64,000 nt of DNA from Euprymna scolopes. Its lineage: Eukaryota. The stretch is taken from NCBI GenBank assembly GCA_053919585.1, contig CM132783.1. One strand, 5' to 3'. Below the pieces are notes generated by a model that saw nothing but the letters and a program-made list of their open reading frames with translations, made no database searches and was not told where the DNA came from. Position numbers and translations under genes: made by a program. Shown here piece by piece: positions 43,930-57,766 of the stretch (its first letter is position 1; each line of letters opens with the position of its first letter).

Positions 43930-44190
43930 AGTCACCTTAGGTGGGTTGCACCAGCTTCCTCCGAAAGAGAGTGTCAAGGGAAGATTAAATTCACAAATAG
44001 TTCCCATTCGCATGTATATCCCAGTTAGGGAAATGATGACGTTAAGTTTTTGAAATTCTTGCAAGGTGTCAACATCCTCCTGCATACAGCCTCTGGTATT
44101 CCCAAGTGGTTACCCATTTGGTACTGACCAAGCTCAATGTTGCTTAACTTTGGTAATCTACTGACAATCAGTGTGTCAATGTGACATACA
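43930..44190 (-). mobile_element. 5S rRNA-derived SINE3-like element (5S part 44084-44190)
   Basis: Minus strand aagttaagcaacattgagcttggtcagtaccaaatgggtaaccacttgggaataccagaggctgta matches the 3' half of 5S rRNA. Confidence 0.7.
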
Positions 44191-44385
44191 AACATACACA
44201 TGAACGATTGCCCTTAAGAAGATAATAGAAAAAAATATTGAAAATGTTTGCTTGGTCCATAAAATGTCACTTCATGTTATTGTTATATATTTTCAATGTC
44301 TGTTGTGTTCAATGTAAATTCTTTTTGATTTCATATCATTTTATTTGAGTGAAGAAACCGTTTTTGTCTTGTTTTTCTTTATCAG

Positions 44386-44531: not shown

Positions 44532-44559
44532 GTAAGAAAAACCACTTTTTGCTTTTTTT

Positions 44560-44880
44560 GAACCTCAGTTTTCATTTTTTTTTTTTTTTTTTTTTGAACC
44601 TCAGTTTTCATTTTATTTAATTTTTTTTGAACCTCAGTTTTCATTTTAATTTTTTTTGAACCTCAGTTTTCATTTTAATTTTTTTTTTGAACCTCAGTTT
44701 TCATTTTATTTAATTCTTTTTTTGAACCTCAGTTTTCATTTTATTTTTTTTTTTGAACCTCAGTTTTCATTTTATTTTTTTTATTTTTTTAAACCTCAGT
44801 TTTCATTTTATTTTATTTTTTTTTTTGAACCTCAGTTTTCATTTTATTTAACTTTTTTGAACCTCAGTTTTCATTTTATT
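44560..44880. repeat. Minisatellite, 10 copies of gaacctcagttttcatttt plus variable T/A tract (about 29-37 bp)
   Basis: Direct reading. Confidence 0.92.
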
Positions 44881-45476
44881 AATTTTTTTAAACAATTAAA
44901 AAAAAATTCGGGTTTGTTCAGACCCCTCCCCCTGCACTATTAAAAAACAAAAGAAAAATATGTACATACACATGACAATTTTCTAAAATCTTGACTTGGT
45001 GTTATCTGTCTTGCTCGTACAGAATGTTTTCAAAATGGCATTGCCTTCACTCCATTTTGTCGTTTAGCCATACAATTTGATATTTTTATTTAAAAAAATA
45101 AAACTACTTAATCTGTTTATCTTATTCTTTGGTGTACAATATTTTCTTTTTGTCATGGATAGATTGTACAGATTTTTCTTTACCTTTGTTTTTGGGATCG
45201 AATTCTGGCCCAGCATAAAAAGATTAAACATTTTCTTTTTGATTACTTGAATTTCTGTATAAACTGTGGCAGAGAAACAATAGCATAATACAGATTTTAT
45301 TATCCTTATGGGACAGAATCCAAGGCAAAAGATCCGAGCATATATGAAATCTAGTAAAGCTTCTTTCTGAATCTAAAGCCTCTTATGACCAGTGATTAAC
45401 TTCAAATTTATAGCATCAATAAAACAGGCAGTTTGAACCACCCATCAGTGACAGGATGCTAGTGTGTTATCAGTCG

Positions 45477-45634: not shown

Positions 45635-46631
45635 TAGTTATCAGTTTTACTGCCTAAGAAAGTGAGTACTAAAAAGAAACTTGATAGTCAATATGATGAA
45701 AATGATAGAAATAGTATTCGGATGAGAGAGAGATAAAGAAGGAACAAGCCATTTTCGGGGGGGGGGGGCTTCATGGAATAAATAAACTTTGCTGTTTTAA
45801 AAGATCCGCTGAAGAAAATAAATATTTTTTAATATAATTAGGGAAAATATGGTGTGAATATTTCAAACATTTAAATGTACTTTTGGGTATGATTTTTTCT
45901 TGTATACATTTAAGCAGACAAGTTTTTGGTGGGAGTTGGCAGTGACTAATATATTTTTTTGTATTTTTGCATCTTCTGCTTAAAAGTTTGGTGTTGCACC
46001 TTAGCAGAATGATGAGAATAATGGAAATAGGATTCTGGTGAGATAGGGAGATAAAAACGGAACAAACCAAAACTAAAATAAATAGTCAGTATAAAAATGT
46101 AAAACCTTGAAATTGTGGTTATAAAAAATTTTTCAATGGAGATCAATTTAATTCAGCTAAATTAAATTAGCTTAATACATTGACCAGATTTTACGTTCAA
46201 ATTATGTATCTCTTAAGACCCTCTTTTCCCACTCTTGTGATCCAATATTGTGTTATATCATAGAAAAAAGAACCATGAAACAGACAAAATGTAGATAACT
46301 ACTGTATTAAGTAGTTTAATAAGAACAAATAGTAAATGTTAGTACAAGTCCATGTTAATGGAATACACATTGTCCGCACACTTTTTTATATCTCCCAGTG
46401 ACTAGAAGTCAAATGGTACATGCCACGCCACAATACCTTGTTTATATACAAAATTTCAAGTTTCTTTTACTCTATTTTGCTATTCTGATGAGAAAAGTAT
46501 TAATTTTAGAAACTCCATGGATTAAGGAAAAACTTTGAACATTCATCTTTTAAGTTTTTATATATATCTATACAATAAATTCCACAGCCAAACAACGTCG
46601 TAGCCCACAAGAGCCATGACAGTCAAAGAAC

Positions 46632-46688
46632 CGGAAGTCCAAGACTCGAGTTTCGCCCTCATTTAGGCTCATCAGTTAGACACATCCG
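46632..46688 (-). ncRNA. Type-I minimal hammerhead ribozyme (mirror copy)
   Basis: Same core; stem II is GCCU/GGGC, so the one difference becomes a G-U wobble. Confidence 0.83.
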
Positions 46689-47067
46689 AACTCAGGATTC
46701 GAAACCCGAGCCTCTTGCATGCAAGGCAAACACTCTACCAACTGAGCAAATGCCCTGCACACAAGAATTTCTATTAACCAACACAGATCAAGCAAACCGC
46801 GCCGAAATCAGACTGTAAAATGAACCTACTTCGTCTCGACAAGGGACGCGGTCATCCAACCAGCTAATAACCCCAAGCCGATGTCTCACAAGTAGGAGTG
46901 CGAGTCAAAAAAACCCAAAAAAAACTCCTACTTGTGAGATATCGGCTTGGGGTTATTAGCTGGTTAGATGACCGCGTCCCTTGTCGAGACGAAGTAGGTT
47001 CATTTCACAGTCTGATTTCGGCGCGGTTTGCTTGATCTGTGTTGGTTAATAGAAATTATTGTGTGCA

Positions 47068-47132
47068 GGGCGTTTGCACAGTTGGTAGAGTGCTTGCCTT
47101 GCATGCAAGAGGCTCGGGTTTCGAATCCTGAG
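47068..47132 (+). promoter_or_regulatory. tRNA-Ala(TGC)-derived Pol III internal promoter (mirror copy on minus strand, 46691-46755)
   Basis: A-box/D-arm gc(t/a)cagttggtagag. Anticodon arm cttgc-cttgcat-gcaag. T-arm ctcggg-tttcgaat-cctgag. No 3' acceptor strand. Confidence 0.75.
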
Positions 47133-47134
47133 TT

Positions 47135-47191
47135 CGGATGTGTCTAACTGATGAGCCCAAATGAGGGCGAAACTCGAGTCTTGGACTTCCG
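47135..47191 (+). ncRNA. Type-I minimal hammerhead ribozyme; predicted cleavage after 47180 (GUC)
   Basis: GUCUAA-CUGAUGA-GCCC(AAAUGA)GGGC-GAAA-C(UCGA)G-UC^-UUGGAC. Stem I extends via CGGA/UCCG across an internal loop. Confidence 0.85.
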
Positions 47192-47604
47192 GTTCTTAGA
47201 CTGTCATGGCTCTTGTGGGCTGCGACGTTATTTTGCTGTGGAATTTATTATATACAATCTCTCACATTCTGAAAATCATATATATAAAGATATTTTCTTT
47301 ATTAGCTTCATGTAATATATTTTAATATATAGTTTTTCAATAATAAAAAATAATGGCATAAGACGGATTTTCCACGTTTTTTAATTCAATAACATTTTTT
47401 TATGTTTTTTGTTATGTTTCTGTTAACTTTAAATATCTCATTTTCTTTTATCAACATTTTTTTTTTTTTACAAAATCCTTTACTATTCAAAAAAAAACAA
47501 AAAAACCTTTTGATCTATTTTCTGAGAAATATACTTTTGTCTCTGGTGAATTGTTTGGTGAGTTTTTTCTAATCAACGAAACATTCTTCAAGACAGTTCA
47601 TAAA

Positions 47605-47682
47605 AAAATATGAATGAGAATTAAATACATCTTCTTGCTTTTAAAATGAATAATGAACATTTTTGAACATATGAATAATGAT

Positions 47683-47718
<36 letters not shown>

Positions 47719-47849
47719 ATATGAATCATTATTCAACATTTTAAAAGCAAGATGTATTTAATTCTCATTCATATTTTATTCATATAAATAATATTATATT
47801 CATAAAAAAGTGGATTATATATATATATATATATAAAATCCACTTTTTT
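47605..47849. repeat. Two foldbacks centred on (TA)n tracts (47605-47777 and about 47804-47849)
   Basis: aaaatatgaatgagaattaaatacatctt / aagatgtatttaattctcattcatatttt, and aaaaaagtggatt / aatccactttttt. Confidence 0.75.
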
Positions 47850-47993
47850 TAAATTCAAATTTAATAGGTCTCCTGATTAAAATAACAGCTGCCTGATCAG
47901 GCATAATTAAAAACAAAAATGATTATATGTCTGTTAATATTTTGTTATTATCTATATATAATATCTATATATGTGTATATATATTTTTTATAG

Positions 47994-52399: not shown

Positions 52400-55300
52400 C
52401 TTTTTTTTCATTTTGTTTTTTTAAATTTATATTCCTTTTTATTTTTTAATCATTTTTTTTTTTTAATTACTATACCTGTTTTTTTTATTCATTTTTTTAA
52501 TTCATATTCCTTTTTATTTTTTATGCCTTTTTTTTTTTAATTCATATTCCTTTTTATTTTTTATTCATTTTTTAAAATTAATATTCCTTTTTATTTTTTA
52601 TTCATTTTTTTAAAATTCATGTTCCTTTTTATTTTTTATTCATTTTTTTAATTTATATTCCTTTTTATTTTTTATTCATTTTTTTAAATTCATATTACTT
52701 TTTATTTTTTATTCATTTTTTTAAATTCATATTACTTTTTATTTTTTATTCATTTTTTTTAATTCATATTCCTTTTTATTTTTTATTCATTTTTGTTACA
52801 TTCATATTCCTTTTTATTTTTTATTCATTTTTTAAAATTTATATCCCTTTTTATTTTTTATTCATTTTTTTAATTTATTTTTTTTTTTATTTTTTATTAA
52901 TTTTTTAAAAATTCATATTCCTTTTTATTTTTATTCATTTTTTAAATTTATATTCCTTTTTATTTTTTATTCATTTTTTAAATTTATATTCCTTTTTATT
53001 TTTTATTCATTTTTTTTATTTATATTCCTTTGTATTTTTATTCATTTTTTTTTAATTCATATTCCTTTTTATTTTTTATTCATTTTTTTTTTAATTTATA
53101 TTCCTTTTTATTTTCTATTCATTTTTTTTAATTTATATTCCTTTTTATTTTTTATTCATTTTTTAAATTTATATTCCTTTTTATTTTTTATTAATTTCTT
53201 TTAAATTCATATTCCTTTTTATTTTTTATTCATTTTTTAAATTCATATTCCTTTTTATTTTTTATTAATTTTTTTTATTCATATTCCTTTTTATTTTTTA
53301 TTCATTTCTTTTAAATTCATATTCCTTTTTATTTTTTATTCATTTCTTTTAAATTCATATTCCTTTTTATTTTTTATTAATTTCTTTTAAATTAATATTC
53401 CTTTTTATTTTTTATTCATTTTTTTTTATTCATATTCCTTTTTATTTATTATTCATTTTTTTTAATTCATATTCCTTTTCATTTTTTATTCATTTTTTTA
53501 ATTTTATATTCCTTTTTATTTTTTATTCATTTTTTTTTAATTTATATTCCTTTTTATTTTTTATTCATTTCTTTTAAATTCATATTCCTTTTTATTTTTT
53601 ATTCATTTTTTAAATTCATATTCCTTTTTATTTTTTATTCATTTTTTTTTAAATTCATATTCCTTTTTATTTTTTATTCATTTTTTTTAAATTCATATTC
53701 CTTTTTATTTTTTATTAATTTCTTTTAAATTCATATTCCTTTTTATTTTTTATTCATTTTTTTTTATTCATATTCCTTTTCATTTTTTATTCATTTTTTT
53801 AATTTTATATTCCTTTTTATTTTTTATTCATTTTTTTTAAATTTATATTCCTTTTTATTTTTTATTCATTTCTTTTAAATTCATATTCCTTTTTATTTTT
53901 TATTCATTTTTTAAATTCATATTCCTTTTGATTTTTTATTAATTTTTTTTATTCATGTTCCTTTTTATTTTTTATTCATTTTTTTAAAATTCATGTTCCT
54001 TTTTATTTTTTATTCATTTTTTTAATTTATATTCCTTTTTATTTTTTATTCATTTTTTTAAATTCATGTTCCTTTTTATTTTTTATTCATTTTTTTTAAA
54101 TTTATATCCCTTTTTATTTTTTATTCATTTTTTTATTTATATTCCTTTTTATTTTTTATTAATTTTTTATTCATATTCCTTTTTATTTTTTATTCATTTT
54201 TTTAATTTATATTCCTTTTTATTTTTTATTCATTTTTTAAATTCATGTTCCTTTTTATTTTTTATTCATTTTTTTTTATTTATATCCCTTTTTATTTTTT
54301 ATTCATTTTTTTATTCATATTCCTTTTTATTTTTTATTCATTTTTTATTCATATTCCTTTTTATTTTTTATTCATTTTTTTATTCATATTCCTTTTTATT
54401 TTTTATTCATTTTTTTATTCATATTCCTTTTTATTTTTTATTCATTTTTTATTCATATTCCCTTTTATTTTTTATTCATTTTTTTATTCATATTCCTTTT
54501 TATTTTTTATTCATTTTTTTATTCATATTCCTTTTTATTTTTTATTCATTTTTTATTCATATTCCTTTTTATTTTTTATTCATTTTTTTTTTATTTATAT
54601 CCCTTTTTATTTTTTATTCATTTTTTTATTCATATTCCTTTTTATTTTTTATTCATTTTTTATTCATATTCCCTTTTATTTTTTATTCATTTTTTTAATT
54701 TATATTCCTTTTTATTTTTTATTCATTTTTTTAATTCATGTTCCTTTTTATTTTTTATTCATTTTTTAAATTTATATTCCTTTTTATTTTTTATTCATTT
54801 TTTTTTAAATTATATTCCTTTTTTTTGTATTCATTTTTTTAATTCATGTTCCTTTTTATTTTTTATTCATTTTTTAAATTCATATTCCTTTTTATTTTTT
54901 ATTCATTTTTTTAATTTATATTCCTTTTTATTTTTTATTCATTTTTTAAAATTTATATTCCTTTTTATTTTTTATTCATTTCTTTTAATTCATATTCCTT
55001 TTTATTTTTTATTCATTTTTTTAATTCATATTCCTTTTTATTTTTTATTCATTTTTTAAATTCATATTCCTTTTTATTTTTTATTCATTTTTTAATTTAT
55101 ATTCCTTTTTATTTTTTATTCATTTTTTTTTAAATTATATTCCTTTTTTTGTATTCATTTTTTTTATTTTATATTCCTTTTTATTTTTTATTCATTTTTT
55201 TAATTCATATCCCTTTTCATTTTTTATTCATTTTTTAATGTATATTCATTTTTATTTTTTATTCATTTTTTTTAATTCATATTCCTTTTTATTTTTATTC

Positions 55301-57760
55301 ATTTTTTTTAAATTCATATTCCCTTTTTTTTTCTTTTTTTTTAATTCATATTCCTTTTTATTTTTTATTCATTTTTAAATTAATATTCCTTTTTTTTTAT
55401 TGATTTTTTTAAATTCATATTCATTTTTATTTTTTATTCATTTTTTTAAATTCATATTCCTTTTTATTTTTTATTCATTTCTTTTAAATTCATATTCCTT
55501 TTTATTTTTTATTCATTTCTTTTAAATTCATATTCCTTTTTATTTTTTATTAATTTCTTTTAAATTAATATTCCTTTTTATTTTTTATTCATTTTTTTTT
55601 ATTCATATTCCTTTTTATTTATTATTCATTTTTTTTTAATTCATATTCCTTTTCATTTTTTATTCATTTTTTTAATTTTATATTCCTTTTTATTTTTTAT
55701 TCATTTTTTTTTAATTTATATTCCTTTTTATTTTTTATTCATTTCTTTTAAATTCATATTCCTTTTTATTTTTTATTCATTTTTTAAATTCATATTCCTT
55801 TTTATTTTTTATTCATTTTTTTTTAAATTCATATTCCTTTTTATTTTTTATTCATTTTTTTTAAATTCATATTCCTTTTTATTTTTTATTAATTTCTTTT
55901 AAATTAATATTCCTTTTTATATTTTATTCATTTTTTTTTATTCATATTCCTTTTCATTTTTTATTCATTTTTTTAATTTTATATTCCTTTTTATTTTTTA
56001 TTCATTTTTTTTTAATTTATATTCCTTTTTATTTTTTATTCATTTCTTTTAAATTCATATTCCTTTTTATTTTTTATTCATTTTTTAAATTCATATTCCT
56101 TTTGATTTTTTATTAATTTTTTTTATTCATGTTCCTTTTTATTTTTTATTCATTTTTTTAAAATTCATGTTCCTTTTTATTTTTTATTCATTTTTTTAAT
56201 TTATATTCCTTTTTATTTTTTATTCATTTTTTTAAATTCATGTTCCTTTTTATTTTTTATTCATTTTTTTTAAATTTATATCCCTTTTTATTTTTTATTC
56301 ATTTTTTTATTTATATTCCTTTTTATTTTTTATTAATTTTTTATTCATATTCCTTTTTATTTTTTATTCATTTTTTTAATTTATATTCCTTTTTATTTTT
56401 TATTCATTTTTTAAATTCATGTTCCTTTTTATTTTTTATTAATTTTTTTTATTTATATCCCTTTTTATTTTTTATTCATTTTTTTATTCATATTCCTTTT
56501 TATTTTTTATTCATTTTTTATTCATATTCCTTTTTATTTTTTATTCATTTTTTTATTCATATTCCTTTTTATTTTTTATTCATTTTTTTATTCATATTCC
56601 TTTTTATTTTTTATTCATTTTTTATTCATATTCCCTTTTATTTTTTATTCATTTTTTTATTCATATTCCTTTTTATTTTTTATTCATTTTTTATTCATAT
56701 TCCTTTTTATTTTTTATTCATTTTTTTTTTATTTATATCCCTTTTTATTTTTTATTCATTTTTTTATTCATATTCCTTTTTATTTTTTATTCATTTTTTA
56801 TTCATATTCCCTTTTATTTTTTATTCATTTTTTTAATTTATATTCCTTTTTATTTTTTATTCATTTTTTTAATTCATGTTCCTTTTTATTTTTTATTCAT
56901 TTTTTAAATTTATATTCCTTTTTATTTTTTATTCATTTTTTTTTAAATTATATTCCTTTTTTTTGTATTCATTTTTTTAATTCATGTTCCTTTTTATTTT
57001 TTATTCATTTTTTAAATTCATATTCCTTTTTATTTTTTATTCATTTTTTTAATTTATATTCCTTTTTATTTTTTATTCATTTTTTAAAATTTATATTCCT
57101 TTTTATTTTTTATTCATTTTTTTAATTCATATTCCTTTTTATTTTTTATTCATTTTTTTAATTCATATTCCTTTTTATTTTTTATTCATTTTTTAAATTC
57201 ATATTCCTTTTTATTTTTTATTCATTTTTTAATTTATATTCCTTTTTATTTTTTATTCATTTTTTTTTAAATTATATTCCTTTTTTTGTATTCATTTTTT
57301 TTATTTTATATTCCTTTTTATTTTTTATTCATTTTTTTAATTCATATCCCTTTTCATTTTTTATTCATTTTTTAATGTATATTCATTTTTATTTTTTATT
57401 CATTTTTTTTAATTCATATTCCTTTTTATTTTTATTCATTTTTTTTAAATTCATATTCCCTTTTTTTTTCTTTTTTTTTTAATTCATATTCCTTTTTATT
57501 TTTTATTCATTTTTAAATTAATATTCCTTTTTTTTATTGATTTTTTTAAATTCATATTCATTTTTATTTTTTATTCATTTTTTTAAATTCATATTCCTTT
57601 TGATTTTTTATTCATTTTTTAAAATTCATATTCCTTTTTATTTTTTTTTCATTTTTTAAAATTTATATCCCTTTTTATTTTTATTAATTTTTTAAAATTC
57701 ATATTCCTTTTTATTTTTTATTCATTTTTTAATTTATATTCCTTTTTATTTTTTATTAAT
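52400..57760. repeat. T-rich satellite of about 5.4 kb, unit about 35-39 bp (att[c/t]atattcctttttattttttattcattttttt[aa])
   Basis: Direct reading; ends at the acceptor of exon 57767. Confidence 0.97.
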
Positions 57761-57766
57761 TTTCAG

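What the first reader, a model, noticed from the sequence alone, without database searches (positions are those of the whole stretch)
46569..47254. tRNA-Ala promoter fused to an intact hammerhead ribozyme, duplicated as a 331-bp divergent inverted repeat: candidate non-coding ribozyme retroelement
Seen: each arm reads outward as 144 nt of unique leader, then a tRNA-Ala(TGC) mimic with D, anticodon and T arms. Its 3' acceptor strand is replaced by stem I of a type-I hammerhead: GUCUAA CUGAUGA GCCC-AAAUGA-GGGC GAAA C-UCGA-G UC^UUGGAC, with a distal CGGA/UCCG helix. A tail of about 60 nt follows. The arms differ at 13 of 331 sites; only one falls in the ribozyme and it becomes a G-U wobble. The right arm has an extra stretch of about 23 nt before a TA run. 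Established: minimal hammerheads with a 1-bp stem III and palindromic loop cleave as dimers and typify Penelope-like element pLTRs and retrozymes. Inverted 5'-truncated pLTRs with a short tail are a Penelope insertion signature, and Schistosoma SM-alpha is a precedent for tRNA head plus hammerhead. Inference: this is a young, non-autonomous, Pol III-driven, self-cleaving element mobilised by a Penelope RT. The internal position of the tRNA part suggests tandem or circularly permuted RNA intermediates.
Basis: partly seen in the sequence, partly recalled or inferred. Interest (0 to 1): 0.88.

Follow-up and report, generated by a model that had tools for sequence, protein, structure and literature searches.

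The report
Inverted hammerhead retrozyme insertion in (TA)n
This inverted repeat is one slightly decayed insertion of a 413-bp non-coding mobile element that joins a tRNA-like promoter piece to a self-cutting hammerhead RNA; it is a new family of a known kind, apparently copied by a Penelope-like reverse transcriptase.

Summary
Two 331-nt arms (96% complementary) each carry an Rfam-significant type I hammerhead and a partial tRNA-like region.

The "leader" and "tail" are not unique. They belong to a circularly permutable 413-bp unit. The own genome (5.9 Gb, probably a cephalopod) holds at least 3,631 units with an intact cleavage-site 23-mer, including tandem arrays of 9 or more units.

In 29 sampled loci:
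- 3' ends fall at unit 331 or about 354, always against (TA)n.
- 5' ends are variably truncated (0.8-2.6 units).
- About a quarter have a head-to-head inverted 5' piece.

On contig C1, close pairs are divergent 11 times and convergent 0 times. This is the published Penelope-like (PLE) insertion signature. An abundant young EN+ PLE that also ends in (TA)n is present. It shares no significant sequence with the unit and has no canonical hammerhead, so the arms are not its pLTR.

The arms share a private variant and differ at 13 sites, which fits one event followed by about 2% decay per arm.

Pol III transcription, in vivo cleavage and circular RNA remain inferred; poly(A) RNA-seq showed none of them.

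This scan has already reported several sister families (286-345 bp) elsewhere in this genome. Verdict: a new member of a known kind (animal retrozyme, Sm-alpha-like SINE).

The parts
46569..46899 (-). Left arm: unit positions 1-331 of the 413-bp element, read on the minus strand; its outer end is the common 3' terminus ...TTATTRTATA next to (TA)n
   Evidence: 96.4% identity to the reference unit from L031
46922..47277 (+). Right arm: unit positions 412-413 and 1 to about 354; its outer end is the second common terminus ...GAAAATC next to (AT)n (BLAST extends it to 47281)
46900..46921 (.). A-rich 22-nt junction filler between the two 5'-truncated inner ends; possibly a remnant of unit positions about 397-411 belonging to the right arm
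   Evidence: only AAAC... aligns; origin not settled
47142..47186 (+). Type I hammerhead ribozyme, right arm; predicted cut after C47180 (GUC|UUGGAC)
   Evidence: RF00163, 45.0 bits, E 1.1e-9, full model
46637..46681 (-). Type I hammerhead ribozyme, left arm; G-U wobble in stem II; predicted cut after the C at 46643 (minus strand)
   Evidence: RF00163, 41.1 bits, E 2.1e-8
47067..47138 (+). tRNA-like region, right arm: 5' acceptor strand, D, anticodon (UGC) and T arms, no 3' acceptor strand; A-box-like TTGCACAGTTGG, B-box-like GGTTTCGAATCC
   Evidence: RF00005 at 47076-47131, 26.9 bits (below the gathering score of 29); no ARAGORN call
46685..46756 (-). tRNA-like region, left arm
   Evidence: RF00005 at 46692-46747, 31.0 bits (above the gathering score of 29)
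46560..46567 (.). Left remnant of the (TA)n target microsatellite
   Evidence: the same kind of flank occurs at other copies
47278..47286 (.). Right remnant of the (TA)n target microsatellite

Best explanation
The repeat is the product of one retrotransposition event of a 413-nt non-coding element. Its unit consists of a 143-nt stretch, a tRNA-Ala-like region with A and B boxes, a type I hammerhead that needs to dimerise through a palindromic helix III, and a 150-nt tail.

Shown:
- The family has thousands of young copies (about 1.3% from the majority state).
- Copies sit in (TA)n microsatellites as 0.8-2.6 units or as longer tandem arrays.
- 3' ends are fixed at two TA-like sites, 74 and 97 nt after the ribozyme cut site; 5' ends are variable.
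- Many copies have a second, divergent 5'-truncated arm.
- In the window, both outer ends are such canonical 3' termini and the inner ends are 5' truncations that meet head to head.

Inferred:
- A GIY-YIG endonuclease/reverse transcriptase of a Penelope-like element cut a short (TA)n. cDNA synthesis was primed by TA microhomology at both exposed ends, or the enzyme switched template to the nascent cDNA. This gave two outward-reading arms from the same template.
- For the family as a whole, RNA polymerase III starts at the tRNA-like boxes and reads through T4-free units in tandem copies. Paired hammerheads cut the multimer into 413-nt monomers, a tRNA ligase of the RtcB type circularises them, and rolling reverse transcription yields copies longer than one unit.
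- The window copy itself is probably inert. Each arm is less than one unit, the two ribozymes lie on opposite strands, each arm has decayed by about 2%, and the right arm has acquired a TTTT run.
For: - Anatomy.
- Unit and tandem arrays: 413-bp spacing on C3 and C16. At least 9 hammerheads at 409-411 bp on C8, and two minus-strand units followed by four plus-strand units on C3.
- Copy number: 3,631 exact matches to the 23-mer across the cut site, 0 in the reversed control.
- Architecture of 29 independent loci: 3' ends at unit 331 or 353-358 in nearly all, 5' ends spread, lengths 0.8-2.6 units, 8 loci with a head-to-head inverted piece.
- Orientation bias: among 100 listed sites on C1, 11 close pairs are minus-then-plus and none plus-then-minus.
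- (TA)n flanks.
- One event: the arms share a private variant (unit 90 G>T, 0 of 38 other copies) and a subfamily marker (unit 62). They carry 6 and 7 arm-specific changes, mostly C>T or G>A. Random copy pairs share 0.18 non-majority variants on average.
- Non-coding: the longest stop-free stretch in a trimer is 79 codons.
- Pol III compatibility: no TTTT in a unit that is 33% T (shuffles give a mean of 4.2, P(0)=0.02); 32 of 38 copies are T4-free from the tRNA-like part to unit 331.
- Dimeric ribozyme fold, and a circular fold more stable than shuffles (z=-3.4).
- Ribozyme varies less than the rest: 0.96% versus 1.4-2.1% minor alleles.
- Published PLE hallmarks match: PMC8557442. A link between retrozymes and PLEs has been proposed for vertebrates: bioRxiv 10.64898/2026.07.22.740005.
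Against: - No sequence homology links the unit to the PLE family examined. BLAST found nothing and the best local alignment is 15 of 16 nt, P=0.049.
- That PLE has no hammerhead recognisable to Rfam, even at E<=10.
- Poly(A) RNA-seq gives only low coverage on both strands, dominated by single loci inside host transcripts. There are no molecule ends at the cut site of full units.
- 5' boundaries next to (TA)n cluster at unit 254/255, 3 nt upstream of the cut. Only 12 copies start exactly at 258. So use of ribozyme-cut RNA as template is not demonstrated.
- The B-box-like stretch has one extra T, and the right arm's tRNA score is below Rfam's threshold.
- The arms differ at 13 sites, more than the mean of 8.4 for sampled pairs. 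The sample is biased towards young copies, however.
Confidence: 0.8

Rival explanations
1. Two independent insertions of the same family hit the same (TA)n hot spot in opposite orientation. The inverted repeat would then be a coincidence of target preference.
For: (TA)n is a strongly preferred target with thousands of copies. The arms differ at 13 sites, as much as or more than random pairs of copies (mean 8.4, maximum 15). Their outer termini differ (331 versus 354).
Against: Close pairs on C1 are divergent 11 times and convergent 0 times; independent hits would give both. The arms share a private variant absent from 38 other copies. The inner ends meet within a few nucleotides of the same unit position (1 and 412), as also seen in L022 (295/297) and L023 (249/245).
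Confidence: 0.08
2. The arms are the pseudo-LTRs of an autonomous Penelope-like element whose coding part was lost or never copied. The sequence would then be an already classifiable PLE terminus, not a separate non-autonomous family.
For: Minimal type I hammerheads with a palindromic helix III typify PLE pLTRs (PMC4209133). The abundant PLE carries a hammerhead-like stretch 60 nt from its 3' end, similar in layout to the unit's 74 and 97 nt, and both end ...AATC|(AT)n.
Against: The tandem period is 413 bp with no ORF. Thirty PLE loci and three 10-kb PLE clusters show no BLAST similarity to the unit and no Rfam hammerhead. The unit contains a tRNA-like module that is not part of described pLTRs.
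Confidence: 0.06
3. The palindrome arose at the DNA level after a single ordinary insertion, by fold-back or inverted duplication during replication or repair, or it is a foldback or MITE-type DNA transposon.
For: Long arms with a short 22-24-nt spacer look like a foldback element. TA-rich palindromes are common next door at 47602-47860.
Against: The arms end at two different canonical termini and the flanks are not inverted copies of each other. Most copies of the family are single-orientation, 5'-truncated and of variable length, which is not how DNA transposons look. The same divergent geometry recurs with different breakpoints at many loci.
Confidence: 0.04
4. It is a classical tRNA-derived SINE mobilised by a LINE (for example RTE, as for Ceph-SINEs). 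The hammerhead would be a passenger.
For: A tRNA-like head with A and B boxes. Cephalopod genomes are rich in tRNA-derived SINEs (PMC6962438; PMC5786205).
Against: There is no poly(A) or simple-repeat LINE-type tail. The tRNA-like part is internal to a tandem unit. Insertions are longer than one unit, with inverted 5' arms and a (TA)n target. The unit has no Ceph or CORE domain (comparison by eye only).
Confidence: 0.02

Closest known systems
Sm-alpha / Sj-alpha SINE-like elements of Schistosoma (Ferbeyre et al. 1998; Laha et al. 2000; as cited in PMC2770079)
   Same: A short non-coding, high-copy retroposon that combines a tRNA-derived, Pol III-type head with a type I hammerhead ribozyme. It occurs both dispersed and in tandem.
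   Different: Unrelated host phylum and no sequence relation tested. The Schistosoma ribozyme has a longer helix III and is active as a monomer (my knowledge of the literature, not tested here), whereas this one has a 2-bp helix III with a palindromic loop. Here the insertion signature ((TA)n, inverted 5' arm) points to a Penelope-like partner.
Metazoan non-LTR retrozymes (Cervera and de la Pena 2020, PMC7229834; review PMC7761336)
   Same: Non-coding tandem units of a few hundred bp, each with a type I hammerhead. Ribozymes that need dimers occur in some lineages. The predicted circular RNA has a stable fold. The family is dispersed in thousands of copies.
   Different: No tRNA-like or Pol III module is mentioned in these papers. 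At 413 bp the unit is at or just above the size range recalled for animal retrozymes (my recollection; the papers read here cite 353-nt constructs). Circular RNA is not shown here. The review states that no motif revealed the autonomous partner, whereas here the insertion geometry does.
Pseudo-LTRs of Penelope-like elements with minimal hammerheads (Cervera and de la Pena 2014, PMC4209133; Craig et al. 2021, PMC8557442)
   Same: A minimal type I hammerhead with a very short helix III. Partial tandems, an inverted 5'-truncated copy, a short extension at one end, and a microsatellite target.
   Different: No RT/EN ORF between the repeats, and no sequence similarity to the abundant PLE of this genome. 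That PLE lacks a canonical hammerhead.
Sister families in the same genome reported earlier by this scan (units of 286, 322, 327, 337 and 345 bp)
   Same: tRNA-like head plus hammerhead, (TA)n target, tandem or inverted insertions, thousands of copies.
   Different: This family has a 413-bp unit with a 143-nt extra segment and an Ala-type anticodon triplet. The window shows the nearly symmetrical inverted form rather than a tandem array.

Membership tests
Hammerhead ribozyme type I (Rfam RF00163) | Covariance-model score at or above the gathering score over the full model | tested here: met
   45.0 and 41.1 bits against a gathering score of 34, model positions 1-45
Hammerhead ribozyme type I (Rfam RF00163) | Conserved core CUGANGA ... 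GAAA ... UH at the cut site, with helices I, II and III | tested here: met
   CUGAUGA / GAAA / GUC|U. Helix I has 6 bp, helix II 4 bp, helix III 2 bp plus a palindromic loop
Hammerhead ribozyme type I (Rfam RF00163) | Self-cleavage | not testable with these tools
   Needs in vitro transcription of monomer and dimer constructs. Poly(A) RNA-seq showed no ends at the site
Animal non-LTR retrozyme | Short non-coding unit in head-to-tail tandem, one type I hammerhead per unit | tested here: met
   413-bp period on C3, C16 and C8; no ORF. The window copy itself is inverted, not tandem
Animal non-LTR retrozyme | Expressed as small circular RNA of unit length | tested here: inconclusive
   Only poly(A) libraries could be laid. 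They gave low background on both strands and no informative joints
tRNA-derived SINE (Sm-alpha type) | tRNA-derived region with internal A and B boxes | tested here: met
   Rfam tRNA model positions 10-63, 31.0 bits (left arm, above the gathering score) and 26.9 bits (right arm, below it). The B box has one extra T
tRNA-derived SINE (Sm-alpha type) | Transcription by RNA polymerase III | not testable with these tools
   Indirect only: the unit lacks T4 runs, P=0.02 by shuffling
tRNA-derived SINE (LINE-dependent, classical) | LINE-derived 3' tail or poly(A), with the head at the 5' end of the copy | tested here: not met
   Copies end in TA-like sites inside (TA)n. The tRNA-like part is internal and copies exceed one unit
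Penelope-like element pLTR (part of an autonomous element) | Repeats flank an RT plus GIY-YIG ORF | tested here: not met
   No ORF in the unit. PLE loci share no similarity with it
Penelope-type insertion (mobilised by a PLE enzyme) | 5' truncation, partial tandem, adjacent inverted 5'-truncated copy, microsatellite target | tested here: met
   against the description in PMC8557442
Penelope-type insertion (mobilised by a PLE enzyme) | Shared 3' end or pLTR homology with an autonomous PLE of the same genome | tested here: not met
   Only GGGCGAAAC-TYGAGT and ...AATC|(AT)n are shared, P=0.049. Only one PLE family was examined in full

The most novel reading that the evidence does not exclude
These elements are a distinct class of SINE: Pol III-transcribed through an exchangeable tRNA-like head, processed by a dimeric hammerhead into circles, and copied by a Penelope-like RT/GIY-YIG enzyme by TA-microhomology priming on a circular or multimeric template. 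This would be the first clear case of tRNA-promoter SINEs partnered by PLEs rather than LINEs. The divergent inverted arms would be a direct footprint of double priming at both ends of the endonuclease cut.
Probability: 0.4. Interest if true: 0.65.

Novelty: new member of a known kind. Interest (0 to 1): 0.45.

Why it matters
Published reviews say that animal retrozymes give no clue to which autonomous element copies them (PMC7761336). A 2026 preprint argues for Penelope-like elements from vertebrate pLTR similarity.

This mollusc family adds independent evidence of a different sort. Thousands of young copies show fixed TA-type 3' ends, variable 5' ends, multi-unit copies and strictly divergent inverted arms, all of which match PLE integration.

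It also couples the ribozyme to a tRNA-type promoter, as in Schistosoma Sm-alpha. This suggests that the head-plus-hammerhead design arose, or was kept, in two distant phyla.

The family is young and abundant enough to serve as a natural data set for working out how PLE enzymes create tandem and inverted insertions, and for testing whether circular RNAs are the templates.

Tried and rejected
- ARAGORN finds no tRNA gene, so the region is a tRNA relic, not a gene.
- BLAST of the unit against 30 GIY-YIG loci and three 10-kb PLE clusters found no similarity.
- Rfam scans of those loci found no hammerhead. One search scanned the wrong sub-range by my mistake. The repeat on the right stretch also found nothing, so the PLE's 'UUGAAGA...GAAAC' stretch cannot be called a hammerhead.
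- Test for ribozyme-cut 5' ends in genomic copies: only 12 copies start at unit 258 directly after (TA)n. Boundaries cluster at 254/255 instead. The idea that cleaved RNA is the usual template is therefore not supported for this family, although one expressed copy does start at 258.
- RNA evidence: poly(A) runs X23 and X24 show no strand-specific, unit-length or cut-site signal. X1 and X20 are contigs and cannot show ends.
- Conservation test: the ribozyme is less variable than its flanks. However, the copies are young and not independent, so this is only suggestive.
- Ceph-SINE identity was rejected: those are RTE-partnered and have no ribozyme.
- Protein searches, structure prediction and complex prediction were not used, because the element is non-coding.
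Full report
**Observation**

The window holds an inverted repeat with arms 46569-46899 and 46924-47254: 331 nt, 96% complementary, 24 nt apart. Each arm, read outward, contains a full-length match to Rfam Hammerhead_1. The right arm scores 45.0 bits at 47142-47186(+) and the left arm 41.1 bits at 46637-46681(-), against a gathering score of 34.

Each arm also has a partial match to the tRNA model, positions 10-63 of 71. The left arm scores 31.0 bits and the right 26.9, against a gathering score of 29. ARAGORN calls no tRNA, in keeping with the missing 3' acceptor strand.

The ribozyme core is canonical: CUGAUGA, GAAA, GUC|U. Helix III is only A-U plus C-G closed by UCGA, so ACUCGAGU is a palindrome. 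Two copies cofold through an 8-bp helix III at -46.5 kcal/mol, against -38.6 for two monomers.

The arms differ at 13 sites. The single difference inside the ribozyme is a C>U that leaves a G-U pair in stem II.

**What the arms are**

The right arm finds 2,772 first-look candidates in the window's own 5.9-Gb genome. All 40 scored hits are full length at 95-97% identity.

Pairs 413 bp apart on one strand led to a tandem locus, L031. It contains a 5'-truncated unit, a full unit, and a last unit ending in TTATTATATA, with the whole array embedded in (TA)n.

I used one natural 413-nt unit as the coordinate system, with position 1 equal to window 46924:
- tRNA-like part: 144-215
- hammerhead: 219-263
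- cut site: after 257

An exact 23-mer spanning the cut site occurs 3,631 times in the genome and 0 times in the reversed control. A hammerhead survey also shows an array of at least 9 units at 409-411 bp on C8, and on C3 two minus-strand units followed head-to-head by four plus-strand units.

**Insertion signature**

In 29 independent loci:
- 3' ends fall at unit 331 (most) or 353-358 (several), next to (TA)n.
- 5' ends are scattered and copies span 0.8-2.6 units.
- Eight loci have a second piece in opposite orientation, joined head to head. The outer end of most of these pieces is again a canonical terminus.

Among the first 100 sites of the 23-mer on contig C1, 11 close pairs are minus-then-plus and none plus-then-minus. 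Six more are tandem at 392-414 bp.

The window copy fits this pattern. The left arm is unit 1-331. The right arm is unit 412 to about 354, so the 'extra' 23 nt is the continuation of the unit to the second terminus...GAAAATC|ATAT. Short TA runs lie on both sides.

This set of features is what Craig et al. describe for Penelope-like elements: frequent 5' truncation, partial tandems, an inverted 5'-truncated copy at the 5' side, a short extension at one end, and a (TA)n target (PMC8557442).

**One event or two**

The arms share a variant seen in none of 38 other copies (unit 90 G>T) and a subfamily marker (unit 62). They carry 6 and 7 private changes, mostly C>T or G>A. Random pairs share 0.18 non-majority variants on average, and two or more in 14 of 525 pairs.

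Together with the strict divergent orientation genome-wide, this favours one integration event followed by about 2% decay per arm. How the second arm forms cannot be decided from sequence. It could be priming from both ends of the cut, or a switch of the enzyme to the nascent cDNA. Near-symmetrical breakpoints in the window (1/412), L022 (295/297) and L023 (249/245) hint at the second.

**Partner**

The genome has 15,395 GIY-YIG candidates. Many have identical scores and open frames of about 800 aa. [quoted passage not shown] Units of 2.9 kb stand in tandem and inverted clusters and end ...CAACAATC|(AT)n.

This makes a young EN+ PLE with the same target a plausible enzyme source. But its 509-nt non-coding part has no similarity to the unit. 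Its hammerhead-like stretch 60 nt from the 3' end (UUGAAGA-AGCCCG...CGGGC-GAAAC-GUUGA-G) is not recognised by Rfam even at E<=10. The best local alignment with the unit's ribozyme and tail is 15 of 16 nt, P=0.049.

The arms are therefore not the pLTR of that element, and the partnership rests on the insertion signature alone. Other PLE families of the genome were only sampled: 30 loci, with no Rfam hammerhead.

**Function of the modules**

*Pol III.* The A-box-like and B-box-like stretches are near consensus, though the B box has one extra T. The 413-nt unit has no TTTT although it is 33% T; dinucleotide shuffles give a mean of 4.2 runs and P(0)=0.02. Of 38 copies, 32 are T4-free from the tRNA-like part to unit 331. 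This is what a Pol III template that must be read through would look like, but it is indirect.

*Ribozyme.* Minor-allele frequency is 0.96% in the hammerhead against 1.4-2.1% elsewhere, with the same trend outside CpG. This is suggestive only, since the copies are young and related.

*Circle.* The circular fold is more stable than shuffles, z=-3.4.

*RNA data.* On a clean 1.34-unit copy (L029), two poly(A) RNA-seq runs give depth of about 50-140 on both strands. The variant patterns show that single loci inside host transcripts dominate. No molecule ends appear at the cut site of full units.

*Genomic footprints.* Some reads reveal a copy that starts exactly at unit 258 after (TA)n, and 12 such copies exist genome-wide. 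However, boundaries next to (TA)n spread over units 249-281 and cluster at 254/255, 3 nt upstream of the cut. Cleavage in vivo, circular RNA and Pol III drive therefore remain inferences.

**Comparison with what is known**

The design of a tRNA-derived head plus hammerhead in a SINE-like repeat is that of Schistosoma Sm-alpha/Sj-alpha (PMC2770079). The tandem, non-coding, hammerhead-bearing unit is that of animal non-LTR retrozymes (PMC7229834; PMC7761336). The ribozyme type and insertion geometry are those of PLE pLTRs (PMC4209133; PMC8557442). A 2026 preprint proposes that vertebrate retrozymes derive from PLE pLTRs. None of the retrozyme papers read mentions a tRNA-like module.

Ceph-SINEs of squids and cuttlefish are a different, RTE-linked family. 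The only cephalopod mention of hammerheads that I found is a count of 235 Rfam hits in the giant squid.

This scan has already reported several sister families with 286-345-bp units in other pieces of this same genome, with the same reading. Contigs of run X1 show other tRNA-like heads joined to the same ribozyme start.

**Host**

The host is a mollusc by the labels of runs that hold the sequence. Genome size, AT richness and the number of large contigs suggest a decapodiform cephalopod. That is my inference only.

**Verdict**

This is a real, correctly described feature: one old-ish insertion of a young, very abundant 413-bp retrozyme/SINE hybrid, with a textbook Penelope-type inverted arm. 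It is a new member of a known kind. Its value is as clean evidence for PLE-type mobilisation of hammerhead repeats in a mollusc, not as a new mechanism.

Noticed in passing
window 44081-44197 (-): Borderline 5S rRNA match (38.4 bits, gathering score 38). Probably a 5S-derived SINE or pseudogene, as reported in large numbers for squid genomes.
   Followed up: no
window 52458-57763 and 44546-44893: A 5.3-kb T-rich minisatellite of 36-bp units (146 copies, 89% matches). It explains the GC 0.13 bin. A smaller 33/66-bp T-rich tandem lies upstream.
   Followed up: partly
window 47602-47860: Nested TA-rich palindromes (for example 32-nt arms, 97% complementary, 115 nt apart) just downstream of the insertion. 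They are unrelated to the 413-bp unit.
   Followed up: no
L064 (G000:C12:14492000-14501999), L065:5215-7608(-): [quoted passage not shown] Sixty nt before its 3' end it has a hammerhead-like but non-canonical motif (UUGAAGA core, one extra A) that Rfam does not recognise.
   Followed up: partly
G000:C8:10432194-10435515; G000:C3:89840417-89842627: A tandem array of at least 9 hammerheads at 409-411 bp. A divergent array of two minus-strand and four plus-strand units at 412-413 bp. Known from coordinates only, because the loci could not be fetched.
   Followed up: no
G000:C6:69439547-69440029: An array of mini-copies, each only unit 254/255 to about 331, separated by (TA)n at about 103-110 bp. 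Many other copies also begin at 254/255 (TA|GTCTTGGAC), 3 nt before the predicted cut site. This is unexplained.
   Followed up: partly
L029:1350-1429 (unit about 266-331): In two poly(A) RNA-seq runs, one truncated copy with private variants has about ten times the depth of the rest of the unit. It ends in (TA)n and probably lies in an abundant host mRNA.
   Followed up: no
L029:1305 (loose ends of run X1): Contigs join other tRNA-like T-arm sequences (for example ...GGGGTTCAAATCCCGAGTTCGGATA) to the same hammerhead start. Sister families seem to share the ribozyme module behind different heads.
   Followed up: no
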